A stretch of 64,000 bases of DNA from Octopus sinensis (Eukaryota). Numbering within the stretch: position 1 is the stretch's first letter; the number at the start of each line of letters is the position of its first letter. Below are positions 15,709 through 64,000 of this stretch, one piece after another. A program made the translations under genes and the position numbers. The notes under the pieces were generated by a model. It had not been told where the DNA came from, searched no databases, and saw nothing but the letters and a program-made list of their open reading frames with translations. The stretch spans positions 140,492,001-140,556,000 of the forward strand of contig NC_042999.1 in NCBI RefSeq assembly GCF_006345805.1. Reading direction: 5' to 3'.

Positions 15709-15837
<129 letters not shown>

Positions 15838-24486: not shown

Positions 24487-24520
<34 letters not shown>

Positions 24521-24900: not shown

Positions 24901-24905
24901 GACCT

Positions 24906-27148: not shown

Positions 27149-27194
<46 letters not shown>

Positions 27195-28011: not shown

Positions 28012-28113
<102 letters not shown>

Positions 28114-30949: not shown

Positions 30950-31013
<64 letters not shown>

Positions 31014-35023: not shown

Positions 35024-35055
<32 letters not shown>

Positions 35056-35058
<3 letters not shown>

Positions 35059-35402: not shown

Positions 35403-35404
<2 letters not shown>
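35056..35404 (-). mobile_element. R4/Dong-like RLE LINE 3' end
   Basis: EEKLNNYDNLKWKLRRLWS...IIPIVIGAFGSI...LQKSALFGTAKILCKVLEA*. The 5' junction abuts (AAT)n at 35405-35443. Confidence 0.75.
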
Positions 35405-35445
<41 letters not shown>

Positions 35446-35743
35446 ACAAAATAATAATTTTTGAGCATCATTAATAATTTCTAATTGGTAATAAAGATGA
35501 TCTATTACATATACAGGCATGATGCATGATGTGATAGATTCAGGTAGGAAAGAACAAGTTATCATCATCATCAGTTTAACACCTACTAATGATGATGATT
35601 ATGATTATGATGATGATAAGTTATTGTCTGACATATCTGACACTTCAACAGTGAAAATGATGTGGAATCACTAAAGCTGGATATGGAAACCAGGCCATGG
35701 GCTCTGTTCATTGAGAAGGATATTTGCTATTCAATAATGCTAT

Positions 35744-35795
<52 letters not shown>

Positions 35796-37458: not shown

Positions 37459-37521
<63 letters not shown>

Positions 37522-39234: not shown

Positions 39235-39514
39235 TTTTGTGGCACTCCATCAGTTATGAGGACGAGGGTTCCAGTTGATCAGATCAATAGAACAGCCTGC
39301 TTGTGAAATTAATGTGCAAGTGGCTGAGCACTCCACAGACATGTGTACCCTTAATGTAGTTCTTGGGGAGATTCAGCGTGACACAGTGTGTGACAAGGCT
39401 GGCCCTTTGAAATACAGGTACAACAGAAACAGGAAGAAAGAGTCTAGGAATCGAAACTGCGATCCTATGACTGCGAGTCCGCTACCCTAATCATTAGGCC
39501 ATTGCACCACCACT
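39235..39514 (-). mobile_element. tRNA-derived SINE with an internal deletion and an 11-bp TSD
   Basis: TSD atgttatctat at 39224-39234 and 39515-39525. Head and tail match the 41744 copy. Confidence 0.85.
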
Positions 39515-41274: not shown

Positions 41275-41690
41275 GGCACAGATGTGGCTGTGAGGCAGAC
41301 ACAGGCAGAGCTGTGTGATAAGAAGTTTGTTTCACAACCACATGGCTCTAAGTTCAGTTTCACTGCATGGCACCGTAGATAAATGTCTTCTACTATAGCC
41401 TCAGGCCAATCAAAGCCTTGTGAGTAGATCTGGTAGGCAAAGACTGAAAGAAGCCCATCATATGTGTGTGTGTGTGTTTGTGCATATGTCTTTGTGTCTG
41501 TACTCCACCACCACCACTTGACAACCAATGTTGGTGTGTTTATGCACTCATAACTTAGCAGTTCGGCAAAAGATACTGATAGAATAAGTACTAGGCCTTA
41601 AGAAAATATTTCTGGGATCGATTCATTCAACTAAAAAGCCTCAAGACAGTGTCCCAGCATGGCTGCAGTCAAATGACTATAAAGATATAA
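41275..41690 (+). mobile_element. tRNA-derived SINE (same family as 31259-31658)
   Basis: tgtcttctactatagcc...aaagccttgtgagt...actgaaagaagcc core and tail cccagcatggctgcagtcaaatgac. Confidence 0.8.
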
Positions 41691-41743
41691 AGATATATAT
41701 ATATATATACATATACATATACATATATATATATATATATATA

Positions 41744-42127
41744 GTGGAGTGCAATGGCCCAGTGGCTAGGGCAGCGGACTCATGGATGTAGGATTGCTGT
41801 TTCAATTCCCAGACCAGGCACTGTGAGTGTTTATTGAGCGAGAACACCTAAAGCTCCACAAGATTCCAGCAGGGGAGGGTGGCGAACTCTGCTGTACTCT
41901 TTCACCACAACTTTCTCTCACTCTTTCTTCCTGTTTCTCTTGTACCTGTATTTCAAAGGGCCAGCCTTGTCACACTGTGTCACGTTGAATCTCCCCCAAG
42001 AACTACATTAAGGGTACACAGGTCTGTGGAGAGCTCAGCCACTTGCAAGTTAATTTCATGAACAGGCTGTTCCGTTGATTTGATCAATTGGAACCCTCGT
42101 TGTTGTAACTGACAGAGTGCCACGACA
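41744..42127 (+). mobile_element. tRNA-derived SINE inserted in (TA)n
   Basis: Head homologous to the 24906 copy. Tail homologous to the 39235 copy. Confidence 0.85.
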
Positions 42128-42340
42128 ATATATATATATATCAATGCTTTTTAATGTTTCTCTGTCAGTAATATAAACACTTTAAACTGAAATATTCTCA
42201 ATACTTTTCTTCAGAGTACATGTTTATTAACTTTAAAATCACTGCCAACCTTTCCCTTACAAAAGTTAATATTTATATATTTTTATTTATATACTTTTGG
42301 GTTTCCCCATGACTAGCAAGTTCATTATAATCATTATTGT

Positions 42341-42706
42341 TTATTACTTCCGCTTTAGCAAAGTTAAGAGGTATTGTTTTCAGTCGTGTTTGTTTGTCTG
42401 TGGACAAGATATGTCAAAAACCACTGGATGGATTTGGATGAAAATTTCAGGGATGTTTGGGCTCATGATTGACATGAACTGATTAGATTTTGGAATCAAT
42501 CTGGGACTGAACAAGGATTCTGGATTATTTTTCCTGTTTTTTTACTTAAATTTTGAGAACAGTCAGGTTCATTTTTAGTATTCTTGTTTGTGAGAGCAGT
42601 TGAGTTTATTTCAGATATACTTATTTTAAAAATCATCTCCAGCTAATCATTGAGAGGACATTGGTGTTGCCTTGGCAGAGGTTTGTGTTCTCTGAGAGCT
42701 CTTATT
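42341..42706 (+). mobile_element. Helentron-associated (DINE-1/HINE-like) element
   Basis: T-rich termini, 5' ttattacttccgct, gtttgtttgtct microsatellite, 3' cttggcagaggtttgtgttctctgagagctcttatt with a degenerate subterminal IR. Confidence 0.6.
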
Positions 42707-43448
42707 TTTTTCACAACAGTCATTATTTGTACTTTGTCTGAGTATGATTCTTTTATATATAAGGGCAATACTTACTTTTATATTTCAATATTTTTCATCT
42801 GATGAAAATGGTCTGCACATCAGATACATATATTGGTATCATCATCGTTTTAACATTCACTTTTCCATGCTTGCACAGGCCACACTAGAGTACACAGAGT
42901 CTGTTTTATGAGTGGATCAGCTCCTGTCACTAGACCCTCACCAGATTCCATGTGAAGTAATAATTTCCCAATCTATCAAACAACAAACATCCCAGACATG
43001 TTTTTTATCCAACCAAGAGGAAACAAAGGACACTATTTTAATGAGTCTTTTGTTTACAAAAATCATACAAGACATGTCAAGAAACCCAAATATTTTTTTG
43101 GTGATGGACTGCAAGGAGGAAGCCATTGTTAACAAACCAGCAGAGATGAGTGCAGCAGAAACCAGCAGAATATGAACTCATCCACACAAGCACACACAAA
43201 AGGTTTCTTTAGTTTCTATCAACCAAATCCACTCATAAGGCTTCGGTCAGTATGAGGCCACAGTAAAAGTCACATGCTCAAGGTGCCACACAGTGGGAAT
43301 AAACCTGGAATCACATGGTTGGGAATTAAACTTCTCAGCCACACACCCATACCTGCACTTAATATCTACCTCTGTGTGTGTGTATTAGTATATCTATGTA
43401 GATATATGTATGCATGTATGAATTTTCCCATACATGAAGGTTGAGAAG

Positions 43449-44200
43449 TATGTTTTTGGATGTGTGTGGATCTAGATACCTTGTTATGTATGCTTTTATA
43501 TGTCGGATTGTACTACTGTGTGCATCAGTGCACATAGGCCTGTATACTGAACTTGGGTTCTCTTCTTTGACATACATGTATATAAGGATGGTCCTGAGTG
43601 CATATCATTAACAGGTACAGTGACAGCACCAACTGAGTTACATGAATCACCCATTTTCTCAAGATCCTAGGAATCAATGGATACCTGCCATCTGTTACCA
43701 ACACTCTACACAGATACCAACCAAATAAACATTGCAGGAGGAATCTCTCTAACACGTGTTTTCCAAGGATAACTCACTTCAACAAGAGGACCATCACAGC
43801 TATCATTAAAGTCAACCACAAGGAAAGTTTTTACATCTTATTAGCCCACTCAGGCCCTTCCCTATGTAGACACTTGTCAATGAAGAGAACCCACGTGGAA
43901 CAACAACCCTACACATTAGTGAACTGTCCCATTTATGACAAGAGCAAGAGTCAGAGAACATATGTGATCTACCAGTTACAGAGTTCCTAATGTGCCACCT
44001 ATTACATTGGTAGCATGATCTGATCACTCCACATATGGCTGAAGGAACATTTGACAACACATGTCTTCCTTTCATGAACACATCCTGAAATGTGGCAACA
44101 CTACTACCAAGATGGATGCTTCCATTGGTCACTGAGAGTAATATTAGAAACCTCCATATCAAGGAATCCTTAATGATCCACTGATTTAACCTAAATGTTA
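43449..44200 (+). mobile_element. Degenerate Penelope-like element (RT C-terminus plus GIY-YIG)
   Basis: FLDV near 43452, KILGINGY near 43660-43684, YVIYQLQSS*CATYYIGSMI*SLHIWLKEH near 43960-44050, NLHIKESLMI near 44150. Multiple stops. Confidence 0.75.
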
Positions 44201-44619
44201 ACAATTGATCAAATATTCATGCACACACACATTTTTATTTATATACATACAAAGCAATGTAGGGCTTTCTCTATGAATATATACACACACACACACAAAT
44301 AACTGGCACAGGTATGACTGTGCCGATACAAAGTTTGTCTTGTAACTGCATAGATTTGTGTTCCATCATGTACATGGAACTTTGGGCAAGTGTCTTCTTG
44401 CTCAAGTGTCTACATACAGGCTGAGCAATACCTTGTGAAAAAAAATATGGTAGACAAAAACTGTATGGAAGTCTACTTTATGTACCTGAGTGTGTTTGTG
44501 TGTACATCTATTATGCATATTAAGTGTGCATCTTCCTATTTATTTCAACTTCTGAAACATTAAACTAATTCACACTTCTGTTTTTTTAATGTTTTTCGGC
44601 CTTTAAATCATCTCTCTCT

Positions 44620-45905
<1,286 letters not shown>

Positions 45906-46325
45906 ATGTGGAGAGAGATTAATTTTTGCATCATTTTAAACTCATATCTCTGAAATCTCTCAGCTCCTCACCCACATGTCTCATAGCATCCAAACTTTAT
46001 TTTGGTATTAACTCCATTGTCTTCTATCTGAAATGACAACTACCATCCAATTTGAAGACCATTACCATTTTTTGACCCCCTACCCCTCAATAATATAGAT
46101 AGATACTAATGCTGACATTTGACTGCAGTTTGAACAAACCACCACAGCAATAATTCAAATTCACAATTGACAACTTCCAATTAATATTAGATTCTACACA
46201 TATGTTCATACCTTTTACAGCCAATGTTCAACAATGTTATATATTTAAAAATATTTATCTTATATCTATCTGTCTACACACACACAGACACATATAAATA
46301 TATATATATATATATACACACACAC

Positions 46326-46402
<77 letters not shown>

Positions 46403-47078
46403 CATACATATATACATATACATACATATATGTATGTATGTATATATATATGCACACACACACAGATTTATATAAAGAAGGCATTAAGAAACTTCGGAAA
46501 ACACAAGAAGGAAAAACAGTGGCATCCTTAAAAAAAACAAAACATATACCATCCCCACTCATTTCTGCATTATTAGATACAGAATGTTAATTTTGTTTGA
46601 GAGACCAATGTGAAAAGCAAAAGATATTGTTAGGAAGAAAAATTATAGTTTGGTTTTGGAAAAGAACAGAATTGAAAAAAAAATTATTATGATTATTATT
46701 GTTATTATTTTCATTATTATGATTATTATTGATTCAAAAAAAAAAAAAACGTTTAATGGAAAGAAAAAAATCCTAACTACAGCGCAAACCTCATGTTCGA
46801 AGGATGTTATATACTGGGATAAGAGTTATTAACACAGTTAGAGAACCAAGTGAGATTTGGGTCAGTTACAGGTAAGTGATTTTGGAAGAAATGATCAGGA
46901 AGAGAGTACTTGCCGAATTATCCAGAGAGAGCTACCACAGAAAATATAGAAAAATGACTTCATGTAAATATCATCTGTCACATTGATGAAGATGACAATC
47001 GAAATAGATATAAGATGCATATATCAATATTACTGTGTGTAACATGTGTATATATGCATGTATGTATGCATGTGTTTG

Positions 47079-47171
<93 letters not shown>

Positions 47172-48750
47172 TAATGTTTTGGAGAAAATTGAGGACTGTG
47201 ACCATTAGCTCAGAATGCAATGATATATTAGTAAAAATGATGAAAAAGAAAGAAAAAAGTACAAGAGAGAATTAAAAAGACATAAAAAAAGATGAAAAAT
47301 CTTTTATGAAAGAAAATAGAATAAGAAAATTGAAAGAAGTATTAAAGAGCAAATAAATTCATTGTTGAGGAATACTTTTGCATATTTTGAGAAATTCTCC
47401 ATGTTAGGCTGTAACTTGACTCCAGTGAAGTTTAGACATTTTTTTTTACCAAGCAGAAGAATTCAAGTGAAAAGGAAGAATTGAAATAAAAAGAAACAGT
47501 AAAAGAAAATAAAGTCTTAAGAGAAAAGCTGCAGAATAAATAGGCAAGTTCAACAAAATAATAGAAGAAAAAACATAAAAAGAAGTAAAGAGGAGAAAAG
47601 TAATTATTTTCTTTCATTCATTAATGTTGCATACAGATGTGTGTGTGTGAGTGTGTGTGTGTGTGTGTGTGCGTCTGTGTGTGCTTGCACGTGTATGCAT
47701 TGAATGCATTTACATTTCTGCGTCTATGTACTTACATTGGTTTATTTGTATATATGTTTGTATGGGAGATTTCATGCATATGTTTATAAATGTGCATAGT
47801 TGCATATGTGTTTTGATATATGCATATGTGTATAAATATGTGTGCATTAATTTAAACATATATATAGAAAAATATATATTTAAGTGCGGCATGCTATATG
47901 CATGCCTATCATATCCACACACATGTGAATCTAATTATGATATTTTTATTTGCCAGCATGTATATGTTTGTGTGTGAGAGCTGTGTGTATGAGTACAGCA
48001 TCTTAAAAGCAGTTTGTAAAAGCAGAATAGTAAATAAAATAAAGAAGCAAAAAATAAATAAAATAAATACAAATAAAAAATATAAAAGAAAGTGAAAAAA
48101 AAAAGAAAAAGTTAACTTTGATATTAGGCTGGTGGAAGGTAGTATTGGTAGAGTGTGGTGACTATGACCCACAGGCCACTGGCTGGAACCAGTGAAAGAG
48201 TAATAGTATAAATTAGAAATTAAAAATATAAACAAATAAAATTAAAATAAACAGAAGATATCTGAAAATAAAAGCAACAAAAGAAATAAAAAAGAGCAGG
48301 AAAGATAAAGAGCATAGGTTGGTGAAATGGTCAAATTTAGACAGATCCAACTATTGAAGAATGTTTGATAGTTTGAAAAAGAAAACATGAAAAATAATGA
48401 TGATGATGATGATTCATGTGGATATCTAAGGGTACTGGTAGTAACCTGTTACCCACATAAATTCTAACAGGAACAAGACCAATCCCAAGTCAAGCTGAAT
48501 AATAATAATAATAATAATGATAATGATGATCCTTTCTATTATAGGCACAAGGCCTAAAATTTTCGAGGAGAAGTCTAGTTGATTACATCAACCCCAGTGA
48601 TTGACTGGTACTTACTTCACTGACCCTGAAAGGATGAAAGGCAAAGTCAACCTTCATGGCATTTGAACTCAAAATGTAAAGATGGGCAAAATGCTACAAA
48701 GCATTTTGTCCAGTATGCTAACAATTCTGCCAACTCACAGCCTTAGTATT

Positions 48751-48784
<34 letters not shown>

Positions 48785-49881
48785 TAAATAATGTTATCAA
48801 AGGGTATAAAATAATAACTAGTTTTGCATGAGTGAATATTAATTAGAAATCAACATCATAGGTTATTGGATGGCAGAATCAATAACATGTCAGACAGTAA
48901 TACCTTGTGGTATTTAGTTACAGTTCTTTATGTTCTGAGTTCAAATCCCATCTAGTCTGACTTTGTCTTTCATTTCTCCAAGGTTGATAAAAAATTACCT
49001 GTTAGAGTACCAGACAAAACACCTTGCAATATTTAGTTATGTTCCTTTATATTCTGAGAGCTAATATTTGGCAAAATGAGTGATGAGCATTATAAGAAGA
49101 ATGACCAAGGTATTGAATTACTTATTCTTGGCAAAATGGATAGGAAACAGATGACCCCCACCCCCCAATGAAGGCATTAAGGCAACAAATTTTATGACAA
49201 CTGTACTCAACAGATACTTTATTAATCTCCAGAAAGATCACAAGTAAAGTTGAGCAGGATATGAACTCAGAACATACAGTGATGTAATTAAATATTGTCA
49301 GGTATTTTCTTGTAGGCCTTACTGTCTTTTTTAATTCGGCACAATATCACAAATCAGGAGTAAGGAAAAGATGATTAAATCAATTGCAGTACTTGACTGG
49401 TAACTATTTTATAGACTTCAAAAGGATGAATTTAACTCAGAATGCAAACATTGCAAGGCACATTTCTGGAATTCTAGCAATTCTGCAACTCCACTGCTCT
49501 ACTACTGTTAATAATAATGATTTCTAATAAAAGCAAAAAGGCCTTAAGTCTGAGGAAAAAGGTTAGTCAATTAAACTGCCCTCAGTACTTAACTAGTACT
49601 TATTTCATCAACCCAAATGAAAGGTAAAATTGATCACGGAAGGATTAATTATAATAATACACTGCTCATAGTCAAAATTTTACACATGCATACATATGCA
49701 TGTATGTATGTGTGCATGTATGTGTATATGCATATTTTATATATATATACGCACATACATACATGCATGTACATATATATACACACACACATATATATAA
49801 ATTGTAGCATGACTTTTCACCCAATGACATTTTGTAGAAACAACTTTTAACAGAATATTTTTGTAAATGTATTTCCATTAA

Positions 49882-50082
49882 CCCTTTTGTTACCATAATT
49901 CTGTTGAGATGCTCTGTTTCTTTCAATTAATTTTAAGTATAACAGAGAACTTAGTAAAATAAGTGTTTAGAACATAAATTGTGACTAAGGTTTGGTGGAA
50001 GATTTTAATTCAGAACTTTTGAAAACAAGACAATTGTACTACAGAGTCAGAGGTAGTTTCAGTCAGTTTGGTATCAAAAGGG
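49882..50082. mobile_element. piggyBac-type MITE
   Basis: TTAA|cccttttgttacca ... tggtatcaaaaggg|TTAA. 14-bp TIR (13/14), 201 bp long. Confidence 0.8.
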
Positions 50083-50688
50083 TTAAACAACTGAAACAGC
50101 TTTTTACTAAATCAAAAGGTTAAGGTTAAGATTAAAGTTGTAGTCAGTCAGTTGGTTTTGAAATTCATATCAGCTATGAGAGAAGTAATCTGTGCTGAGC
50201 AGCCATGAGTAGACCTTGAAAATTTTGAACTATGTTGCCTGATTCGTTGATCTGAGGTTTTAATATCCCTAATATAATATTAAACAATCATCTCAAAAAG
50301 AAAAAAATCTACAAAATTATTCTATGGAAAGTTGTTTTGATAAAATTTCATTCAATAAAAGTCATTGAATGAAAAATTGTAGCTATATATATAATATCAT
50401 TTAATGATGGCAATATTAACAAATGATGGCCATGACTCTGGGTTTCATGCAAAAGTAATAATGTATCACATAATGCACCTCAAATGTAGCCATCTGATGA
50501 GTGTGACATATAGTTACTTTTATATGAAACTGTGAGTCATGATCATTGTTTGTTAGTATGATAATCATGAAACTACATTATATATCTTCACTATATTCAT
50601 AGTCGAGCACTATTTGGTTTTTAATTAAGAACTGCAACTGAGCATGTGTGTGTGTATGTAAGTATGCATGCATGTATATATAGATATA

Positions 50689-50772
<84 letters not shown>

Positions 50773-50841
50773 CACACACACATACATACATACATACATG
50801 TATATGTAGGTATGCATATATATATATTTATTTACACGTGT

Positions 50842-50888
<47 letters not shown>

Positions 50889-52039
50889 TACATATATGCA
50901 CACATATGTATGTGTAGCAGCAACTCTTGGTGGAACTGAATCTATAAATTTGAAGCAAAGAAATTAGAAATAAAGAAAACAGTAAAAGAGAAGGAAAAGA
51001 GAGTCTGAAATAGAAGTGAATGTATTTAGATGTAGTGAATATGACAGTACAGAGAAATAACAGATTAGAGAGTGATATAATTGAGTATAGGCTATTGTAT
51101 ATAGAAGCCCTATATAATAAAATGATCTTTAGAATTAAGTTCAATGTCTACAAATGAGTGCAAAGAGAAAGCAAGGCAAAGAAAAGTAAACAAAAATGGG
51201 GAGAAAGAGAAGAAACAAATTTAGTTGGAAAAGAAAAATTAAGAATAAAAGGCTTATTCAAGTTGAATAGCCAGAACTGAGTGACCCAGAATAATAATAA
51301 TAATAATAATAACGATAATGATAATAATAATAATAATGATAATTATAATAATAATAATAATAATAATAATGATAGAAGATGATGATGATGTTAATGATGA
51401 TTAATGTAGACTTATAAGCTATGATATACTCATTATGCTTTTATTCATGTTCTTGTTTATCACCTTGAAGTTTAATTATTATTAATCATGTTTTTAAATT
51501 TATAACCTGCAACTTTCTTATTTCCATTTTAAAATCTTGGTCCCTTGGTAGTTCCTCAAATTTTTTCACTTTAGTATTTTTATTAGAAGGAATTGAGATT
51601 TCTATCAGGGTTCATACATTTTTATTCCTGCCATTAATAGTTATTACAGCTTGAGGTTTTGTTTTGATCGCTCTGTCATTTGTGAATACTTAGGCAAGTA
51701 GGGTAAAGGGTCTTATACAAGGATAAAATGCTATGGTTTTCAGAGAACCATTCATCAAATGAGCTGTGTTTAATAATAATTTGATTTAGGTGTAAAACCA
51801 GCAACTTTGAAGGAAGAGGGTTACACAATACCATTGACCTAAGTACTAGGCAGATACATTATTTTATTGACTCTGGGTATAAAAGACAAAATTTACCTCA
51901 GCAGGATTTCAACTCAGAATGCAAAGAGCCAAAACAAATGTGCTTCCCTCAATGTTCTAATGATTCTGCTAATTTACAGTTAATAATAATAATAGTACTA
52001 TTATTACAACTACTAATAGTAATTTCTTGTCTTTGCCAC

Positions 52040-52670
52040 TGGGGCATTCAAAGGTAGGAGGATTACATAAAATTAGTGAGAAGGAAAAGGAAAGGGGTAG
52101 GGATAATTGATGAGAAAAATATACATTGTATACAAAATTAATAAATACATGGTTGATATAATTCTCCTGATACAAGGAGGGCTTGTATCAATCAAGCTAG
52201 GGTCAATCAAGAAATCCCACAGATACAAGATCACCTTGACCACCAAGAGCATGAGCCTTCACCAAAATACTGTTCTCCAATTCACAAGTTACCCACTTTT
52301 TGACAAACCTGCTTCTCCTTCCAAGTGAAACTTTAAAAAGCTGATGAGGGCTTAACTGAAGAGAAAGATTCTATCCTCAATCCTTTCAGCCTCATCCACC
52401 ACACAACCTCTTTTATCATAGCCTCAGTAAAGAAGGGTGGTAGGCTGATCCTCAAAATGAACATGGCAAATAAATGTGAGACAATCTTCATTATAACTCT
52501 ACAAGTTAGTAAAGCTTCAACACTACATGACTGCATACAGTACTGTTACATCATGCATCAATATATTTCTAATACTTGATATCAGTGAGAACCTCACAAG
52601 AAACTCAACAACTTGGGGGTACATTACCAAAGCATTAATCACTGTTTCAAATAACTCACCACAACTCAGG
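52040..52670 (+). mobile_element. Possible highly degenerate CR1-like RT fragment
   Basis: EPHKKLNNLGVH-like remnant near 52590-52625. Otherwise weak. Confidence 0.3.
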
Positions 52671-52677
52671 GCCTCAG

Positions 52678-53037
52678 ATTGGTTCGCGTGCCAGTGGCAT
52701 GTAAAAAGTACCATTCAAGCGTGATCGTTGCCAGTGTTGCCTTACTGGCACGTGGAAAACAATATTCGAGCATGGTTGTTGCCAGTGCCGCCAGACTGGC
52801 TCCTGTGCAGGTAGCACGTAAAAAACACCCTCGAGCATGGTCATTGCCAGAACCACCTGACTGGCCCCCATGCCGGTGGCATGTAAAAGCACCTACTACA
52901 CTCATGGAGTGGTTAGCATTAGGAAGGGCATCCAGATCAGATTGAGCCCAGTGCAGCTTTCTGGCTCACCAGTCCTCAGTCAAACTGTCCAACCCATGTC
53001 GGATTGGAAAGCGGATGTTAAATGACGATGATGATGA
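52678..53037 (+). mobile_element. (GAT)n-tailed SINE with tandem modules
   Basis: Same family as 1371-2524. Confidence 0.8.
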
Positions 53038-53785
53038 ACTTAGACACTTCTATCTGCAATGATAGATCTTGCAGATTATTTAGGAGCCTGGTACCCAATG
53101 GCCATTAGAAAAGCATTTGCAGGCCTTTCTTTATCACATCTAATTTATCTCTTAGAACATCATTCTTCACTGTAGTGTGTGTGAAGTGTGGTGTGATGTG
53201 ATGTGGTGTGGGTTGTGTGTGTGTGTGTATTAGCTTGCACACACAGAGAAATTTATTTGAAGAAAATTTGGTCTTTTCTGGGTTAATAATCTCTGCTTTT
53301 GTATTTTGTATTTCTATTGATAAAAAACTTTTGATATATCTTTTATCTAAATAATAGGCCTTTCTATTATAGGTACAAAGCCTTAAATTTTGTAGCAGGG
53401 GACTAGCTGATTACATCAACCCCAGTGCTCAACTGGTATTATTTCATTGATGCCAGTCACAACTGGTATCATTTAATTGACCCCAAAAGGATGAAAGGCA
53501 AATTTGGCTGTGGTGGAATTTGAACCCAGAAATTAAAGAGCTGAAAGAAATGCTTTTAAGCATTTTGTCCAACTTGTAAATGATTCTACAAGCTCAATTT
53601 CTTTAAAAGTAAGTATTATCTAGGAGTTCTAAGACTCATAGGGCCAGTTACATTGTTTCCATAGCATATAAATGACCAAGATCACAAAATTCTTCCTGAA
53701 TAGGATGCCAGTCCATCAAAAGGTTATTCAGTGGCAGCTGAGTGAACTGGAGCAATATGAATACAATGCTCAAGAATACAGCTGA

Positions 53786-55063
53786 GTGAACCGGAGCAAT
53801 ATTTCCCTTACATCAATAATCAGCAAGATGTTCGAAACCATCCTTAAGAAAAGTATGATGCTCCACCTCCTAAACACAGCCTCGATCACTAATTCCCAAC
53901 ACGGCTTCGTGCCAAAGAGATCATGCTTGACCAACTTACTAGTAATGGAAGAATTGGTGACGCGCATCCTTGATGATAGTGATGCTGTTGACATCGTTTT
54001 ATTGGACTTTGCCAAAGCTTTTGACTCGGTAAACCACCGCCTACTACTTGTCAAGCTTCAAGCATATAGTTTCCATTCGGATATTGTACGATGGGTTGGT
54101 GCCTTCCTCTCAGATCGCTCCTTCCAAGTTCAAGTTAATGGTTCGCGGTCCGACGTCTCCAGTGCGAGCAGTGGCGTGCCTCAAGGTTCAGTGCTTGGGC
54201 CCTTGTTGTTCTTAGTCTTCATAAATGACTTGCCCAACGACCTCACGCAACACACCCTTCTATTTGCCGACGATATCAAACTGGTCGCTCCTCGCGGTAG
54301 TATAGAGGATCTTCGTCGATGCCTCCACCAAATTTGGAAGTGGTCTAACGATTGGGACCTGTGTCTGAACGTGTCAAAGTGCTGTCATCTGCCTGTCGGC
54401 TTTACTCCTGCAACTCAACTTGATTGCGAGCCGGGTCGTCTGTTGCTGGAGAGGACCGATCAGGTAAAGGACCTGGGTATCTTGGTGGATTCCTCCTTTT
54501 CGCCTTCGGCCCAGTGCGTCCATGCTGCCAACAAAGCGCGCGGAATTCTGTTTTTGATTCAACGGTCATTCGGAATGCTCACAGTAGCCATATTCCTACC
54601 ACTCTATGTCACGCTGGTGAGACCCATATTGGAGTATGGGATTCAAGCCTCTTCTCCTTATCTCCTCAAAGACATACAGCATCTCGAAAGAGTCCAGAGG
54701 CTGGCTACCTGCATGGTTCATGGTCTCAAAAATTTGTCCTACGAAGAAAGGCTGAGGACGCTCGACCTTTATTCTCTTGAAAAACGCCGCCGCCGTGGTG
54801 ATCTCATTCTCGTCCACAACATCATAAGCGGGAAGTGTAACCTCTTGAAAGAGCTGTTCTTCACTCCTGCTCCGGAGCGTCGGCTGCGGGGTCATTCCAA
54901 AAAGCTCTACCTGCGACGATTTCATCTCAATCGAAGGAGAGGAGCTTTCTCCGTCCGGGTTGCAGATCTGTGGAACAAGCTGCCAGACGAGATGGTGAAG
55001 ATGCCGACGACCGCTTTGTTCAAAACCTCCCTGGACCTCAAGTGGCCTGAACTCTTTACATGA
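53786..55063 (+). CDS. Non-LTR retrotransposon reverse transcriptase, N-terminally truncated (no endonuclease)
   Basis: Motifs QHGFVPKRSCLTNLL, LDFAKAFDSVNH, GVPQGSVLGPLLFLVFINDL, LFADDIKL, LERVQRLAT. The first few listed codons derive from flanking sequence. Confidence 0.9.
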   Translation: MNRSNISLTSIISKMFETILKKSMMLHLLNTASITNSQHGFVPKRSCLTNLLVMEELVTRILDDSDAVDIVLLDFAKAFDSVNHRLLLVKLQAYSFHSDIVRWVGAFLSDRSFQVQVNGSRSDVSSASSGVPQGSVLGPLLFLVFINDLPNDLTQHTLLFADDIKLVAPRGSIEDLRRCLHQIWKWSNDWDLCLNVSKCCHLPVGFTPATQLDCEPGRLLLERTDQVKDLGILVDSSFSPSAQCVHAANKARGILFLIQRSFGMLTVAIFLPLYVTLVRPILEYGIQASSPYLLKDIQHLERVQRLATCMVHGLKNLSYEERLRTLDLYSLEKRRRRGDLILVHNIISGKCNLLKELFFTPAPERRLRGHSKKLYLRRFHLNRRRGAFSVRVADLWNKLPDEMVKMPTTALFKTSLDLKWPELFT

Positions 55064-55147
55064 ACACCACCCTGTACTTAACTCCATGTCCCCCTACATG
55101 GCCTTGCTATTTGCTTTTGAGCCAAATTAACTAACTAACTAACTAAC
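53803..55147 (+). mobile_element. Young 5'-truncated CR1/L2-group LINE
   Basis: Uninterrupted RT frame to 55063, short 3' UTR with a ccatgt/acatgg hairpin (55084-55101) and a (TAAC)5 tail (55128-55147). Confidence 0.93.
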
Positions 55148-56629
55148 AATGCATTATCTGGTAAAAGAAGCTAATAACAATAATGATTTCTAATACAGGC
55201 ACATATCTAAAACAAGTTGGAGGAGAAGTATAGCTGATTTAATCAACTCCAATATGTGATTGATACTTATTTTATTGATCCCGGAAAGATGAACGGCTAA
55301 GCTGATCCCAGTGGAAACTGAACTAAGAATGTAAAGGATTGTAAATAGATGCCACAAAGCATTTTGTCTAAGTCTACCGATTTTATCATCTCCATAGTGA
55401 ATACTACTAAAAATATATACTGCAGTAAAATATCAAACCCAGATGCAATATTTGTGATCAGTTTGATGAAACCATCAGCACAATTTGCCTCACACTGACC
55501 ACTGCAAATTGCTTCAGGAGACATGGCAGAGTGACTGTCTTTACTCCACTGGAAAATAATGTCCCAGAGACAAAGGTAAGATTCTTTAGGATATGTAAAT
55601 ACATACAGATAAAATAAGAGTGAACTGCTTTGACATGATTATATAGACAGGCTATTTATGTCTCATTTAGTTATTGATATGGTTTTCCCAATACACTTTT
55701 ATACTGATGTAACATGGCCAACAATCAATAATATGAAGGAAGTAAAAGACCTTGTGGTAGAAATATTGATATAGAAAATGGATACACAAACAGTCCCTGC
55801 TTTTATATGAGTGTTCAAAGCAGTGAAAATGACAGCAGAAACAATCTATATCATTCTAGTATATTTAAAAAGATGCAATTGAATTTTTTACAGATGCAAT
55901 GTAATAAGTTATAATGTTCGTACCTTTTTAAAGACATTAATGTTTAATGAGAAACAAAATCGATATATTAATTTATTTTATTAAAAAAACTTGCCTCTGC
56001 CTCATGATTTATAGCCCACTGCTTTTTTACTGTTTAGTTAAGTAGGAAAGGACAGTACCCACGATCAATTGCTTTTAAAGGGCCTCTAAGAGTGATGGGA
56101 TGTAGGGAGAAGTTATCTTGAAACTGGTGACCTGAATGCTTGCAACAGAGTGCACTCTGCTAAAGGCACACAAGAACTCAGAATGTAAAGGCCCAGAACA
56201 AATACCACAAGGCATCACATGACATCCTGCCAATCCACTGCACTGGACTGGTACTTTATTTTATCAACTTTGAAAGGATAAAAGGCAAAGTTCACATTCG
56301 TGGGATTTGAACTCACAGTAGAGAGAGTCAGAACTCTAATGACTGTAAATTTGCCACCTTTATTAACAAAATGATTATTCCTTTAGATTAAACAAAAGGT
56401 CAATGATTTCTTGTAGTGAACTAAGAAATATGGTACATGGAGTATTGAACTACCTATTTACTGGTATACTAAATGAAATACTATATTTTCAAGACAGCTA
56501 TCTGAGCCATTTGTCTCTTGGCATAAAATGCTTACAAAAAATTAATTGTTATAATACATCTTTATTGGACAAAGAGATAATGTCTTATTTGAATTTATAA
56601 ATAATATTTTAATTTCTATATAAATATAA

Positions 56630-56694
<65 letters not shown>

Positions 56695-58961
56695 ATAATA
56701 AAAAGCTAGTCATGTAGAATACACATCCATGCAAAACTGCTGAAAAACATTTTGTAATCAATGCTCTGTAGAACTGTATCAGAACTCCCTGCCTGGTAAT
56801 GATTTCAAAACCCACCACAAAGCTTGATCTAACTACTTCCTCCCTAACATGGGAATGCATTCATTACAATATTTTCAAAACACAAACACAAGTAGTTCAG
56901 ACATAATTATCAGGAACAACAAAATTGAAAAACAAGTGACTTGCTGCAAAAGTTAGTTCTCCAGAAGTTGGATATATCATTTCTGAAATAAATCGAAAAG
57001 AAAATATCTCTGTATAACTAATGAGGAACTTGCATGTTATATATCCAGTCTATGGCTTCATATTTATGTTTAAAGTCATCTGTGCATTTTGATCATATAA
57101 AGAAATAACTTATGAAATTGCATTTTAGAAAGAATGGAATGGACACAGTTGAGTTACATGCCAGATATTGTGGTTTAGCACTAATGTCAACACATTGAAC
57201 AGAACTATAATGAAAAGCCTTTCAGCTGTGACAATTTTTAGAGGAATATAGAATTACATTATCTAATGTGTCCTTATTTAATATGGTAGAGTGTGATTTA
57301 TGGGAGATTTAGCTACTGTTACTAGTAGCTCTATTGACCGTGTAGAGGCTTCCTTGTTGGCTCTTAACAACAAGATATTGTATTCATAAAAAGTGATGTG
57401 AAAACTGTTCAGTTTGATAATTACAGGAAACAATTAAGTGAAAGAGATAAATCTTTACAACGTAGTTAATGACTGTTTAGTTAATTTTAAAAAAAAAGTA
57501 TTGGAGGACACATACATATGTATATCAGTAATTGTACTAATAATATTCTTGAAAAAACTTGAAATCTTTTGTTTTAAGATATTTTAGGGACAACTAAAAA
57601 CTTTTCTTTTTTTTTTGTTTCATTGTTTACCTTCAGAGTACTCTCTATCAAAGGGAATCAGTGATGAGAACATTTCAAAGAAAATTCAATAAGAAAAGGG
57701 TTTTCAAAAATAAAATTTATAGTTTACAAATAATCAGTAAAGCTTGTGATAGGTTCTTCATTATCACCATCATCATCATAATCTGCTTCATCATCACTAA
57801 CACATATACATAATCTCTTTATATGTACATGTATATATTCTTACATAATCACATTCACGCACACATACATAAACATACACAGCAATCATAATATGTACAC
57901 AAACATACTTAATTATATAAAGAGTACAGTGCATACACAAACATATGTGTGTGTACACAAATATATACATACACATGTACAGACATATATATATTGAAAA
58001 AAAAAATGTATGTGTGAAGGAACCTGTAGAAGAAGATACAAGAAGTGAAAACTGCTTTTGCAATGTTGAACACCAAGAAGATGACTTGGAAGTTTAGCAT
58101 TAATATATATACATAAAGCATAGCAATGAGGAATAGCAAGTGAACTACATACTAACAGACTAAATATATCTAATTAATAGTGATGGTTGAAGTATTTCTT
58201 TGCTAACATAACAAAGATAAAATTTAAAACAAACTGTGGCAAATACTAAGAATAGATACAAAAAAATTCTACAAAAAAAAAAAAGAGAGCTTAACTAATA
58301 AATAATAAAGTATAAGAGAAATTGAAAAAAAACTACAGCAGAGACAAAACAATGAGCAGAGAAGTATTTTTAGTAATTTTATTCAAAATAGTAGTAATGA
58401 AGAAATAATCTAAAAGGTAAACTAATGCTACTGATAAATCATTGAAGAAAAGCTCATTAATTTTAATGAAAAGATAATCAAAAACTATTTAGATATATTA
58501 AAGAAATTTCATGCTGATTTTTAGCAGAATGGTTTTATGGATTTTAAATGAAATCAAAGCAAAAGATGAAAAAGTGAAAAGATTTTGCATTTTATCTCTG
58601 CTGCAAAATTGTTGTTATTGTTATTATTGGTGTTTTGTGTTCAGGTATTTATATGTGTTTGTAAGATGGGAAATCACAATGTTCATATTCCTGCCTTGCT
58701 GAACCAATAACAATAACAACATAAAAAAACCACTACCCCACCTCCCATTCAAGCTAATTTTATCAAATTGTACAAACAAATGCATACATTTTTCAAACTA
58801 AGGAAACTACAATATATATATATATATACATACACACACATTATATATATATATATTATATATATATATATAAGTAAAGAAATAAAAGTGTGAGCATAAC
58901 AATAATGTAGTGCTGTGTCAATCGGTGAAACGATTAATAGTAACAGGTTTGTTGTACTCAC

Positions 58962-59009
58962 AGCTCCCGAAGATAGCGTTGGCTGTGACGGGTCGTCATT
59001 GTCAATTCT
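58962..59009 (-). CDS. Candidate 48-nt cassette exon of Cav1 (RIDNDDPSQPTLSSGA), probably in the domain IV S3-S4 linker
   Basis: Minus strand reads ...cctactaatgttgcttcatttag|AGAATT...GGAGCT|gtgagt. 48 nt, open in phase 0, 25/48 GC in AT-rich surroundings. Phase matches the phase-0 start of the IVS4 exon. No transcript evidence available. Confidence 0.55.
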
Positions 59010-61775
59010 CTAAATGAAGCAACATTAGTAGGAAGGGTTAAAGTAGCCAAGACAAACCACAAATTATTCTACCACTAGTAGAAATATATGCACACAAACA
59101 CACAAAGAGAAAAGAAAAGCCACAAGCATATACACATAGGCACACACAGTAAAAGATAAAAGAAAAGAAAAAAAGCAAAAGAAAAAAATAACATGCAGCA
59201 AACAACAAAAAAGGTTTTTGCTGTTTAAGCATGATGCAAATTGATGTGAGTTCAGAATGATGTATGGTGTATTTTAAAGATCTAGGTGAAACAGCTGCTA
59301 AGCAAAAAAATCCACTCATTTATTTTTGCTATGATTTCACCACTGCAACATCTTGATGAAATTTTAACCATTGGCATTAAAGTGATATAATGTAGGGGGC
59401 ATGTCTTTAGATTACTAAGACTATCACTGAAATAACTGTTTGCTTTATTCTCAATTTTCTATGAGAAGTAGTTGCAGATAACTATTGCCTAAAACTAACA
59501 TTAGTGATGAAATGAAAGTGATGATGATGATGATGGTGGTAATAAGGATTATTATGTCAAAGATATTGATGAATGACTAATAAAATTACAGAGGAAGGTT
59601 TAACTAAATGATAGAATGAAAGTAGTTAATACACTCACATGGTAATATCCCCAGGAGGTATAGATTGAGAGTTGCCAATGAAAGTATGCAAACCTTCAGA
59701 AGTAAACATACTTTGGTCTTCATAAACATATTGGTTTCAGTGGAACACTTAGACCTCTGATTTCTAGAAATCATTTGCTTTCAGAGTTGTTAAACCTTGG
59801 ATCTTGTGGTCTTGGCACTCAAAGTGGTTGCTCTCAATATATAGACTTAAGTAGAGATGTCTTGAAAAGGGGAAAATCAAAATTCTAGTGTCATTTGCTC
59901 AGGAAAAGTAAAAGTGACAAGGCTGTTGCATTATTACTGTATTATTGAATTATTGTTGAGATTATAGGTGATGATACTGCTGATAGTCAACATGACCTTA
60001 TTGTCTATTTTTGTTTCAGTACAACTGTTGTGGGATGATGTTTTTATTATCAGTTTTTAGATGTCTAAATTGTTTCAGATGATTTGTTACTAAGATTGTA
60101 ATATCTTTAGGACTATTAGCCTCATCTTTAGTAATGAAAAATGTCTAATATATATATATAGATGTAAATATTTTTAAAAATGTTTTTATCCATAAAGATG
60201 AACATTCAGAATCATATCATTAGTGCCATTGATGAGTTTTTGCAGTTGGTGATATTACTGTTGGTACTCTTGGCTTTATTGCTGCTGGTAGTGAAAATGT
60301 ACTTTTAGTCAATATGATACCATTGCTGTAAGAAACAACCCTTAATTGACAATATTTATTTCAGTGTTGCAAAGTGAAAACATAGAGAGAGATGCTTAGT
60401 TCTCTAGCTTATAAAGTGCAGAATAAAGGATTATTTCCCAATGTTTAACTGTAGTTTTTTTCTTTTTATTTTAATGGTTTAGTCAGAGGAGGAAAGGTAG
60501 TGCCCAAAACTATTTTCATGGTTTCTGTAATTGATGGGAAGAAAGTGTCTTCAGACCAGAGATCTGTTCTGAATGTTTGCAATGTAAAAAAAGGTGGAAG
60601 ACTAAACCTATCACTGAGAAGAACAGGAATGGTCCATTGGACAGGCAAACAATTTTCATCAATTTCACTAACAAGGTCTTGATTAACCTGAGATTATGGT
60701 AAAAGTTTCCCAAGGAGTAGCAATGTGGGATTGAACCATATAGTTGTGAAGTGAATTTCTTAATCACATAGCTATGACTTCATCCATTATTAAGGCTGTA
60801 TAGAAACATCAATAAAAAAAAGTAGAGGAAGAGGGAGGTGGTTAGCAATGATAAAGTGAAAATGGTGATAGTAAAAGGTCGAAATCTAGAGCAATATGAT
60901 GCATGAAAAGGAGAGAGAGAGTAAAAAGGTTAAGAAAAAAGGGGGAAAAAGGAAAAGAAAAGATGAAAGGGGTATAATCAGTTAGAAAGTAACAGACCAG
61001 CCAAGACATGACATAAATCAGAACTTTGAAGAAAGTATCTTAAAGGCAAAATATTTTGCCAAGTTTATTAAATGAAAAGAGACAATTTAGGCATCCCATT
61101 CTACCTATCAAGTAAGGAGTAGATGACTCTTTGGCACCTACATATAGTATAAGCACCCAAAAGTGTAGACCATACATGGCAAATGTATGTGAAAAGTTAA
61201 ACAAAGAAGATTAAGAGAAAAAAAAAGAATAGGAAGAAAAGGTAAAATAGGAAAAGTATAGGGAGAGGCAAAAATATGAATGTTACTCTTTTTACTGGAG
61301 ACAAAATTTGGCACTTCAAAGCCTTGGGCTTGCTTATATTGTGATTTCATGTTTATGTGTGCGTAATCATTTTTATTTATTTGATATTATTGCATCCATG
61401 TGCACACCTGTTGGCATAAAGTATATTGTTACATTAACCAGTTGCTGACTTTCTGAAACAACTGTGAAAGACTAACTACTAGTATATTTTTGTTTTGCTG
61501 GTTATATTATAGCTGTGAAAATGATATAAAAGATACAATGCAATGTATACATGTTTGCCCATCCTTTATCTTTTTTTACATGCTTGAGCTACACAGATCT
61601 ATGCAGATTTCTTGTTCTACAGAATTACTTTTATTTTGAATTTTAAGAGTTTTGGACCTTCAGAGCATTAACCCAGTATTTATCTATGGTACACATATAC
61701 TAGACTCTTCTCAACCATTGTATATATACATGTGTGCAAGTGTGTGTGTATATACACACATATACATAGATATTT

Positions 61776-61807
<32 letters not shown>

Positions 61808-61989
61808 GCATGTATACATATATATATTTAAGTGACAGCAACTTACACATATCTCCCAATGCCAAGAATCTCTATCTTCAATTTCCAGTCGTGAATAGCA
61901 GCAATGAAGTTGAATGGCCCTTGTCCAATGTTAGGGTGTGAAAATCTCCAAAATATATCATCTGACAAGGCTTGTTGTTTAGCAAGAAA

Positions 61990-62470
61990 GCAGTGATAAA
62001 AAAAGGTAAAGGTAAAGTTACCTTCTCGAGTCATACTGACTCACAAGGGCCAGTTTTCCAGTTTGATGGTGTATATATTCCCCACCTGACGGGATGCTGG
62101 TCCATTGTAGGATTACTCATTTTTGCCAGCTCAGTGGACTGCAGCAACATGAAATGAAGTGTTTTGCTCAAGAACACAATGCATTGCATGGTCCAGGAAT
62201 TGAAACCACAATCTTACAATCTGTTTCTTTATTACCCACAAGGGGCTAAACATAGGGGGGACAGACAAATGGATTAAGTTGATTACATTGACCCCAGTGC
62301 GTAACTGGTACTTAATTTATCGACTCCGAAAGGATGAAAGGCAAAGTTGACCTTGGCGGAATTTGAACTCAGAATGTAATGGCAGACGAAATACGGCTAT
62401 GCATTTCGCCTGGTGTGCTAACAATCTTACAATCATGAGTCAAACACCCTAACCATTAAGCTACATGCCT
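61990..62470 (-). mobile_element. tRNA-derived SINE host carrying a nested SINE
   Basis: Minus-strand head ggaggcatgtagcttaatggttagggtg...gtggtttcaattcctggacc, split by an insert. Confidence 0.75.
62222..62420 (-). mobile_element. SINE (core gcctttcatcctttcggagtcgataaattaagtacc) with a 14-bp TSD
   Basis: TSD acaatcttacaatc at 62208-62221 and 62421-62434. Degenerate relatives near 13130, 48531, 48870, 49510, 51770, 53355, 55190 and 56160. Confidence 0.88.
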
Positions 62471-62842
62471 CCACTAGATAGCAGTGGCCTGCAATTCTAG
62501 CAGAGATGGATGGAATGTATCCATAAATCTTCTCTTCAGTGATCACATCATGGAATATTTGGAGCCCTCATATGAGGCCTAGGATTTGTATAATGAAATT
62601 GATCTTGAAACACCTTTGTAGTTGAAATTTTAATTTCACAGTAAAGAATATTCTCTGCAAATGCCTTGAAGAAGGAAAACCTTGTTGACTTTGAAATACT
62701 TGATCTATTGGCATACATAGGAGGGGCTGAAACTTCAAACTTACTGTCAACCCTCTTCTTACAAAAGTATAATATATATATACACACACACACCACATGT
62801 ATGTATATATACACATATAGATGTGTATATATGTATATGTTT

Positions 62843-63050
62843 ATCATCATCATCATTCGTTGACCCCTTTTCCATGTAGCATGAGTTGGATGGTTCAACA
62901 AAAACAGACAAACCAAAGGGCTGCATTAGTTACTAAGTTTACTTTGGCATGGTTTCTACAGCTGAATGCCCTTCCTAATGACAACTATTTAACAGAGTGT
63001 ATTGGGTGTATTTTATGTGGCATCAGCACTGGTGAGGTTGCCAAGTACCT
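62843..63050 (-). mobile_element. Degenerate (GAT)n-tailed SINE
   Basis: (cat)n followed by ...ttttccatgtagcatgagttgga...cagctgaatgcccttcctaa. Confidence 0.7.
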
Positions 63051-63167
63051 GTAAGATTAGACCCCTCAAATGAGTTGGTTATTGAATGGAGGGATAAGAA
63101 ATTATGATAGAGGGTGAAGGAGAGCAGATGTGTTGCTGAAGAAGTGAATGCATGAGTTGCCCACTTG

Positions 63168-63215
<48 letters not shown>

Positions 63216-64000
63216 TGCAGTCCATGTACAAGGTGAATATTAAACATAAGATGATTAGAGATAGGGAATATGTTGGACACAGAGAGGGGAAGTGAAGGAT
63301 ATAGAAGACTGATGGAAGAGTAGGTGTTAAAAGATGAGTGGTTGAGGAAGGCTTGACAGAGCCTCAATTCTTGATACATGGATAGGTCTTCTCAAGCATG
63401 AAAAACATTATTATACATAAGTCACAGCAGGTGTCTATTCCAAAATGTAACTTTTGAGACCCATACACTTGCCCACTCAACCAAGTATGCATGGTTAGCT
63501 CAGTGGTATATGAAGCTGAGGTCACCTCAGTTCTACAAAATAACAAAACTCGAAAGGAAAAGTACACTGGCATATGTGAAAGTAACTTTAACAAAAAAAA
63601 ATGATATGCCAATCACCAGCACATAAACAAGAAGAAAACAACTAAGTTAACAAGCCATCAACAAAGAATCTTAGAGTGATTCATACCATAATGTTAATGG
63701 GTCATGGAGGTGCAGGCTTTGTAGAGTAGAAAGAATTTATATCCTTTTTAAATCTAAGAGTTCCACTGACATACTGAATTCTAGATCCAAGATTTTCACT
63801 AAATGAAACTACTTGACAAATTTCTATTATCAAACTGGCGAACACCACCCTCTCTGGATTAGGCATACAATCTCACAAACTTTAACCTTTCCCCTTGCAA
63901 AGTCTGGAGGAAGGGACAGAAACTTTGACCATGTGGGGCCTTCAAGACTGGCGAGTCTGATGCTATTATTATTTCATTTAAACTGTTGCAGGAAAGACAT

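What the first reader, a model, noticed from the sequence alone, without database searches (positions are those of the whole stretch)
58921..59040. Hidden 16-aa cassette exon for the domain IV voltage-sensor loop
Seen: a branch-like ctactaat, a TGC about 10-12 nt upstream of the AG, a 48-nt stop-free phase-0 exon with 4 CpGs, a strong gtgagt donor, and a TGCATG about 185 nt upstream. It is absent from the ORF track. Established: IVS3-S4 linker length is tuned by optional exons in vertebrate Cav1 (exon 33 in Cav1.2) and shifts voltage dependence, and UGC near the 3' splice site marks SRRM4-type neural microexons. Inference: a lineage-specific acidic, Pro/Ser-rich insert (RIDNDDPSQPTLSSGA). Its placement assumes the IVS3 exon lies beyond 64000, since I did not find it in the window.
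Basis: partly seen in the sequence, partly recalled or inferred. Interest (0 to 1): 0.72.

Follow-up and report, generated by a model that had tools for sequence, protein, structure and literature searches.

The report
Annotated octopus calcium-channel cassette exon
The 48-base segment is a real optional exon that adds 16 amino acids to the outer loop of the fourth voltage sensor of an octopus L-type calcium channel, but public Octopus sinensis gene models already include it, so it is a confirmation and not a discovery.

Summary
The exon is 59009..58962 and reads RIDNDDPSQPTLSSGA. It follows ...ctactaatgttgcttcatttag and is followed by gtgagt.

Splice signals alone are not above chance. Six other pseudo-exons in the 40.6-kb intron score at least as well.

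Homology settles the question. Octopus sinensis RefSeq isoforms X1-X4 of "muscle calcium channel subunit alpha-1-like" carry exactly this peptide between IVS3 (...IIYTEVN) and IVS4 ([14 protein letters not shown]...). Isoform X5 skips it. Argonauta hians keeps 15 of 16 residues.

The same intron holds a second annotated optional exon, an 18-nt microexon (LSLDNS, 46931..46914) with a GC donor. A third 4-aa module (RNSE) lies outside the window.

Inserts at this EVN|PG site recur across protostome Cav1 genes, with unrelated sequences.

An effect on gating is inferred from vertebrate Cav1.1 exon 29 and Cav1.2 exon 33 and was not tested. The kind of exon is well known and this one is already annotated, so interest is low to moderate.

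The parts
58962..59009 (-). 16-aa cassette exon (48 nt, phase 0-0) encoding RIDNDDPSQPTLSSGA, inserted in the IVS3-S4 extracellular linker
   Evidence: Sequence. Identical peptide in O. sinensis XP_036357314-17. tblastn of isoform X1 residues 1314-1329 maps here. Argonauta hians keeps 15 of 16 residues.
59010..59031 (-). 3' splice region: CTACTAAT branch-point-like motif (59031..59024), TGC (59021..59019), short pyrimidine tract, AG (59011..59010). The nearest upstream AG is at -61.
   Evidence: CTACTAAT occurs only twice in the 40.6-kb intron.
58956..58961 (-). 5' splice site gtgagt of the cassette
   Evidence: donor score 3.4, within the range of the real exons.
59192..59197 (-). Single TGCATG 188 nt upstream of the cassette. 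It is an Rbfox-type hexamer and is not above chance.
   Evidence: 18 TGCATG in 40.6 kb (0.44 per kb).
46914..46931 (-). Second optional exon in the same intron: an 18-nt microexon encoding LSLDNS, ag|CTCTCTCTGGATAATTCG|gcaagt (GC donor)
   Evidence: Unique match in the window, context. Present in RefSeq X1/X2. A cuttlefish-type transcript has QRLDAS at the same site.
23181..23303 (-). IVS4 exon ([41 protein letters not shown]), the acceptor partner of the cassette, phase 0
   Evidence: The exon boundary Q|PG is conserved in genomic ORFs of other protostomes.
3956..19701 (-). Downstream constitutive exons from IVS5 to past the IQ domain: 19701-19636, 18615-18524, 16947-16794, 15837-15710, 14367-14271, 12721-12517, 4647-4517, 4066-3956
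   Evidence: With the IVS4 exon they splice into 369 aa contained exactly in O. sinensis X1, X3, X4 and X5. Pfam Ca_chan_IQ, E = 8.6e-18.

Best explanation
The segment is a genuine, already annotated cassette exon of the single octopus L-type (Cav1) calcium-channel alpha-1 gene. The gene runs on the minus strand.

The exon sits in an intron of more than 40.7 kb between the IVS3 exon, which lies beyond position 64000, and the IVS4 exon (23303..23181).

When included, it is spliced in phase 0 after ...IIYTEVN (or after TEVN-RNSE). Downstream it joins either the IVS4 exon directly or the 18-nt LSLDNS microexon at 46931..46914. It adds 16 acidic, Pro/Ser-rich residues to the extracellular S3-S4 loop of voltage-sensor domain IV.

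Together with the 4-aa and 6-aa modules, it gives annotated inserts of 0, 16, 20 or 26 residues.

Shown here:
- the exon's existence, position and frame;
- annotated inclusion and skipping;
- conservation across octopods.

Inferred:
- Lengthening this loop changes how S3 and S4 of domain IV pack. This would weaken the contact between the outer IVS3 aspartate (D in FIDII) and the first two S4 arginines.
- That would move activation to more positive voltages and/or lower open probability, as Cav1.1 exon 29 and Cav1.2 exon 33 do.
- Inclusion would then be regulated by tissue or cell type.
For: - Exact peptide in O. sinensis XP_036357314.1, XP_036357315.1, XP_036357316.1 and XP_036357317.1, between IVS3 and IVS4. 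XP_029634462.1 skips it.
- The five isoforms differ only in the linker modules and in one Arg produced by a tandem donor.
- The window's spliced exons are contained exactly in these proteins.
- The Argonauta hians model GAB1599644.1 reads RIDNDDPSQPKLSSGA at the same place.
- The exon keeps 4 CpGs in an intron with CpG observed/expected of 0.24, and it is not a repeat.
- The IVS3 aspartate (D85 of the domain IV fragment) and the S4 arginines (R124, R127) are invariant in 20 aligned Cav1 sequences.
- The mechanism for Cav1.1 exon 29 is described in PMC5330888. That review also states that IVS3-S4 splicing is common in the Cav family.
- AlphaFold2 places residues 100-116 of the fragment as low-confidence coil between the S3 and S4 helices (weak model).
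Against: - No RNA reads or junction counts could be inspected, so inclusion and skipping rest on RefSeq models.
- The Argonauta model might have been built with octopus protein hints. The conserved genomic sequence would still be real.
- Splice signals alone are no better than several pseudo-exons.
- No functional data exist for any protostome IVS3-S4 insert in the papers searched.
- The structure model is low-confidence (mean pLDDT 62, pTM 0.35).
Confidence: 0.9

Rival explanations
1. The exon is effectively constitutive in octopods. The 16 residues are then a fixed octopod extension of the loop, and the skipping isoform X5 is a minor or artefactual model.
For: Four of five O. sinensis isoforms and the only Argonauta model include it. 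No read-level evidence for skipping was available.
Against: RefSeq X5 and the O. vulgaris model CAI9720191.1 skip all three modules. Neighbouring modules are clearly optional. Optional inserts at this site are annotated in oyster and seen in cuttlefish-type transcripts.
Confidence: 0.12
2. It is a chance pseudo-exon that a gene-prediction pipeline picked up and that spread to other annotations by homology. It would not be a functional exon.
For: Six other intronic segments and three antisense ones match its splice scores. No proteins of 100 aa or fewer in the large protein database carry the insert. No transcript contig with it was found.
Against: 15 of 16 residues are conserved and open in the Argonauta genome, inside a very large intron. 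This is close to the 97% identity of the rest of the protein. CpG and GC content are in the top 0.8% of intron windows. A near-consensus branch point sits at the right distance. The region is single-copy.
Confidence: 0.04
3. It is a neuron-specific exon controlled by the Srrm234 eMIC domain (SRRM4-type) and/or by Rbfox.
For: UGC at -12, an AG exclusion zone of about 59 nt, and a CUAAU branch point at -19. These match three features reported for fly eMIC-dependent exons (PMC8797185). One TGCATG lies at -188.
Against: At 48 nt the exon is longer than typical microexons. The single TGCATG is what chance gives (0.44 per kb). The RefSeq name is 'muscle calcium channel'. No expression data were available.
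Confidence: 0.25

Closest known systems
Vertebrate Cav1.1 (CACNA1S) exon 29, a 19-aa optional exon in the IVS3-S4 linker
   Same: Both are frame-preserving cassettes of similar length, in an L-type channel, in the loop between IVS3 and IVS4. The IVS3 aspartate and the S4 arginines R1/R2 that mediate the exon 29 effect are conserved in the octopus channel (PMC5330888).
   Different: There is no sequence similarity. The octopus insert is acidic and Pro/Ser-rich and is predicted to be coil. It comes with two further optional modules. Its effect on gating is untested.
Vertebrate Cav1.2 (CACNA1C) exon 33, an optional cassette in the IVS3-S4 linker
   Same: Both are optional exons immediately upstream of the IVS4 exon in a Cav1 gene. 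Alternative splicing in this linker is reported to affect the voltage dependence of activation (cited in PMC5330888).
   Different: The sequence and length differ. They probably arose as independent exonisations in the corresponding intron. Orthology was not shown.
Optional EVN|PG inserts in other protostome Cav1 genes (oyster REKGDLK, abalone YQRECNVTGDVCRYV, insect 6-aa inserts, spider 23-24-aa inserts)
   Same: All insert at the same point, between ...(T/S)EVN and PG..IISINFF. Isoforms with and without the insert are annotated in Ostrea edulis.
   Different: The sequences are unrelated. The octopus isoforms X1/X2 have the longest linker among the 103 proteins surveyed and are built from three separate modules.
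Cephalopod 6-aa linker microexon (octopus LSLDNS, cuttlefish-type QRLDAS)
   Same: It lies in the same intron and the same loop and is also optional.
   Different: It is a different exon, 12 kb downstream. It has a GC donor and is shared by octopods and decapodiforms, whereas the 16-aa exon was seen only in octopods.

Membership tests
IVS3-S4 linker optional exons of high-voltage-activated Cav channels | The host gene is a Cav1/Cav2 alpha-1 subunit | tested here: met
   369 spliced aa are contained exactly in O. sinensis 'muscle calcium channel subunit alpha-1-like'. Pfam Ca_chan_IQ, E = 8.6e-18.
IVS3-S4 linker optional exons of high-voltage-activated Cav channels | The exon lies in the intron between the IVS3 and IVS4 exons and encodes part of the extracellular loop | tested here: met
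   The insert sits between ...FIDIIYTEVN and [14 protein letters not shown] in the RefSeq proteins. The IVS4 exon is at 23303 and no IVS3 exon is in the window.
IVS3-S4 linker optional exons of high-voltage-activated Cav channels | Frame-preserving, with no stop codon | tested here: met
   48 nt, phase 0-0.
IVS3-S4 linker optional exons of high-voltage-activated Cav channels | Both inclusion and skipping occur | tested here: inconclusive
   RefSeq models X1-X4 include it and X5 skips it. No reads could be examined.
IVS3-S4 linker optional exons of high-voltage-activated Cav channels | Inclusion changes the voltage dependence or kinetics of activation | not testable with these tools
   Only analogy is available (PMC5330888), plus conservation of D4, R1 and R2.
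Orthologue of vertebrate exon 29/33 | Sequence homology of the exon | not tested
   The insert resembles none of the linker inserts in the 103 Cav1 proteins surveyed, almost all of them protostome. The one vertebrate row is a Cav1.4-type channel, and the exon 29 and exon 33 peptides themselves were not compared. On this evidence I treat the exon as analogous, not as shown to be orthologous.
eMIC (Srrm234/SRRM4)-dependent neural microexons | Very short length (typically 27 nt or less, at most about 51 nt) | tested here: inconclusive
   48 nt is at the upper edge. The length limits are from my own knowledge.
eMIC (Srrm234/SRRM4)-dependent neural microexons | UGC close to the 3' splice site, a long AG exclusion zone, and a strong CUAAY branch point | tested here: met
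   TGC at -12, nearest AG at -61, CTAAT at -19. The features are as listed in PMC8797185. Each is a short motif, so this is weak evidence.
eMIC (Srrm234/SRRM4)-dependent neural microexons | Neural-specific inclusion that depends on the eMIC domain | not testable with these tools
   No expression or perturbation data were available.
Rbfox-regulated exons | (U)GCAUG enriched in the flanking introns | tested here: not met
   One TGCATG at -188 and none within 300 nt downstream. The background rate is 0.44 per kb.

The most novel reading that the evidence does not exclude
Octopods may tune the fourth voltage sensor of their only L-type channel with a three-module combinatorial linker of 4 + 16 + 6 aa. 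This linker accounts for all annotated isoform differences except one Arg from a tandem donor. The octopod-specific acidic 16-aa module would produce a graded or tissue-specific shift in activation voltage. Its 3' splice-site architecture suggests it may be under the ancient neural eMIC splicing programme.
Probability: 0.3. Interest if true: 0.45.

Novelty: already known. Interest (0 to 1): 0.22.

Why it matters
The result shows that the first-stage reader can recover a real 48-nt alternative exon from raw sequence inside a 40-kb intron.

Biologically it adds little that public annotation lacks. The exon, its skipping isoform and the two neighbouring modules are all in RefSeq.

The modestly interesting points are these:
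- Apart from one Arg produced by a tandem donor, all annotated splice diversity of this octopus Cav1 gene falls in the IVS3-S4 loop.
- The octopus loop is the longest among about 100 Cav1 proteins surveyed.
- Unrelated inserts have arisen at the same EVN|PG site in many protostome lineages. This parallels vertebrate Cav1.1 exon 29 and Cav1.2 exon 33.

If the insert shifts gating, it would be a clean case of convergent use of one structural lever. That is testable by expressing three existing isoforms.

Tried and rejected
- **IVS3/IVS2 exons in the window.** I searched by regex and by sensitive tblastn with mollusc, arthropod-like and vertebrate-like IVS2-S3 peptides and with the full O. sinensis X1 protein. 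Nothing was found. The ORF 55297-55524 (-), with 'LQYIFLVVFTMEMI', matched an IVS2 peptide only at E = 6.2 and was rejected as chance.
- **Splice-site weight-matrix null.** It does not separate the candidate from pseudo-exons, so I did not use it as support. Two GC-rich pseudo-exons at 52746-52856 lie in a SINE-like repeat.
- **Short protein queries.** They list only targets up to about 1.75 times the query length, so they could not show full-length isoforms. I solved this by padding the query with four copies of the spliced window protein.
- **Degenerate DNA pattern for the exon in metagenome contigs.** No match.
- **AlphaFold2 of domain IV with the insert.** The model is low-confidence (mean pLDDT 62). 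The insert is modelled as coil with pLDDT below 50. I did no fold search.
- **Literature.** No paper in the library describes IVS3-S4 splicing of a cephalopod or other mollusc Cav1.
- **RNSE module.** No AG- or GT-flanked match in the window, so it lies beyond 64000. It could be an alternative donor of the IVS3 exon or a 12-nt microexon.
Full report
**What is at the coordinates.** The window is AT-rich, microsatellite-rich animal DNA. On the minus strand, 59009..58962 reads AGAATTGACAATGACGACCCGTCACAGCCAACGCTATCTTCGGGAGCT, which translates to RIDNDDPSQPTLSSGA. It is preceded by ...cctactaatgttgcttcatttag and followed by gtgagtac.
- CTACTAAT starts at -22 and TGC at -12.
- The donor is gtgagt.
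- The exon has 4 CpGs and 52% GC.
- A TGCATG lies 188 nt upstream.
- The nearest upstream AG is at -61.

**The host gene.** ORFs and tblastn with retrieved homologues show an L-type (Cav1) calcium-channel gene on the minus strand. I fixed the splice junctions of nine exons:

| Exon | Coordinates | Content |
|---|---|---|
| E1 | 23303-23181 | IVS4 |
| E2 | 19701-19636 | |
| E3 | 18615-18524 | |
| E4 | 16947-16794 | |
| E5 | 15837-15710 | |
| E6 | 14367-14271 | |
| E7 | 12721-12517 | |
| E8 | 4647-4517 | IQ motif |
| E9 | 4066-3956 | |

They join into an open 369-aa sequence. Pfam finds Ca_chan_IQ. No IVS3 or IVS2 exon exists anywhere in 23370..64000.

**Is it more than chance?**
- On splice signals alone it is not. 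I used a crude consensus weight matrix with approximate frequencies from memory. The candidate scores -0.8 for the acceptor and 3.4 for the donor. This is within the range of the nine real exons.
- Six other frame-preserving, stop-free AG...GT segments in the same intron score at least as well. Three do so on the antisense strand.
- Composition does set it apart. The intron has CpG observed/expected of 0.24, and only 0.8% of 48-nt windows reach 4 CpGs with GC of at least 52%. CTACTAAT occurs twice in 40.6 kb.
- The region is single-copy in the window. The only comparably GC-rich pseudo-exons lie in a SINE-like repeat.

**The decisive evidence.** Short protein queries could not show full-length proteins, because the search lists only targets up to about 1.75 times the query length. 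A padded query returned Octopus sinensis 'muscle calcium channel subunit alpha-1-like' at 100% identity. Cluster look-up and inspection give the following linkers:

| Sequence | Linker between IVS3 and IVS4 |
|---|---|
| X1 XP_036357314.1, X2 XP_036357315.1 | TEVN-RNSE-RIDNDDPSQPTLSSGA-LSLDNS-PGSP |
| X3 XP_036357316.1 | TEVN-RNSE-RIDNDDPSQPTLSSGA-PGSP |
| X4 XP_036357317.1 | TEVN-RIDNDDPSQPTLSSGA-PGSP |
| X5 XP_029634462.1, O. vulgaris CAI9720191.1 | TEVN-PGSP |

- The window's 369 spliced residues are contained exactly in X1, X3, X4 and X5. The window is therefore O. sinensis or a relative with identical coding sequence.
- The five isoforms differ only in these linker modules and in one Arg. 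That Arg comes from a tandem donor at 12517/12520.
- The Argonauta hians model GAB1599644.1 reads RIDNDDPSQPKLSSGA at the same place, 15 of 16 identical. The rest of the aligned protein is 97% identical.

**The rest of the linker system.**
- The 6-aa module is an 18-nt microexon at 46931..46914, ag|CTCTCTCTGGATAATTCG|gcaagt. It therefore uses a GC-AG intron.
- A 2012-aa ORF on a 7.5-kb Logan contig must be a spliced transcript. It clusters with cuttlefish (Acanthosepion pharaonis) CACNA1D and has QRLDAS at the same site. Sibling contigs and the cuttlefish models have no insert.
- RNSE has no AG- or GT-flanked match in the window.
- In 103 Cav1 proteins from the search, 63 have the minimal ...EVN|PG.. 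linker. Inserts at exactly this point occur in spiders (23-24 aa), nemerteans (10-20 aa), abalone (15 aa), oyster (7 aa, with and without the insert) and insects (6 aa). Their sequences are unrelated, and octopus X1/X2 is the longest.

**How it most likely works.**
- Shown: inclusion adds 16 residues with net charge -2, rich in Pro, Ser and Gly, to the extracellular S3-S4 loop of voltage-sensor domain IV.
- A low-confidence AlphaFold2 model (mean pLDDT 62, pTM 0.35) extends the S3 helix through TEVNRNSERID. It leaves NDDPSQPTLSSGAPGSP as coil with pLDDT below 50 before S4.
- Inferred, by analogy with Cav1.1 exon 29. That 19-aa exon shifts activation about 30 mV positive and lowers open probability. 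It does so by weakening contacts between an outer IVS3 aspartate and S4 arginines R1/R2 (PMC5330888). The review also cites Cav1.2 linker splicing.
- The aspartate (FIDII) and R1/R2 (FFRLFRV) are invariant in my alignment. Lengthening the loop is therefore expected to shift or damp activation, perhaps in steps with 0, 16, 20 or 26 extra residues.
- Nothing here tests this.

**Regulation.**
- The 3' splice region shows three features reported for fly eMIC-dependent neural exons: UGC near the 3' splice site, a long AG exclusion zone and a strong CUAAY branch point (PMC8797185; my counts).
- These are short motifs, the exon is 48 nt, and no expression data were available.
- The lone TGCATG is at background frequency.
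- I rate the SRRM4-type reading at about 0.25.

**Novelty.** Optional exons in the IVS3-S4 loop are textbook for vertebrate Cav channels. This particular exon and its skipping form are in RefSeq. No paper in the searchable library describes it or any mollusc Cav1 linker splicing. It is therefore annotated but uncharacterised. Verdict: observation confirmed, interpretation supported, already known; interest about 0.2.

Noticed in passing
window 46914-46931 (-): An 18-nt microexon (LSLDNS) in the same intron has an AG acceptor and a GC donor (gcaagt). It is in RefSeq X1/X2, and a cuttlefish-type transcript has QRLDAS at the same site. It therefore looks older than the 16-aa exon.
   Followed up: partly
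window 12517-12520 (-): A tandem 5' splice site (GCCG|gtagta versus GGTA|gtaagt) adds or removes one Arg in VVPPAG[R][10 protein letters not shown], just before the IQ motif. RefSeq X2 lacks the Arg.
   Followed up: partly
window 53786-55063 (+): A 425-aa open reading frame with a reverse-transcriptase domain (Pfam RVT_1, E = 4.8e-30). It is a LINE-type retroelement inside the channel intron, antisense to the gene.
   Followed up: partly
window 2213-2514, 11256-11397, 14849-15262, 21153-21478, 44950-45046, 52600-53050: A SINE-like interspersed repeat family with 72-77% identity between copies. Its GC-rich copies create open, splice-site-flanked pseudo-exons such as 52746-52856 (-).
   Followed up: partly
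beyond window position 64000 (minus-strand upstream): A third optional linker module, RNSE (12 nt), is present in RefSeq X1-X3 but has no splice-flanked match in the window. It is either an alternative donor of the IVS3 exon or a 12-nt microexon.
   Followed up: partly
window 23370-64000 (-): The intron shows strong CpG depletion (observed/expected 0.24), while the cassette keeps 4 CpGs in 48 nt. That is the highest CpG density of any exon of the gene in the window.
   Followed up: partly
window 44000-46000 and many other places: There are very long (TA)n/(TATG)n-type microsatellite tracts. GC falls to 0.20 in 44001-46000. These tracts generate long spurious Y/I-rich ORFs in all frames.
   Followed up: no
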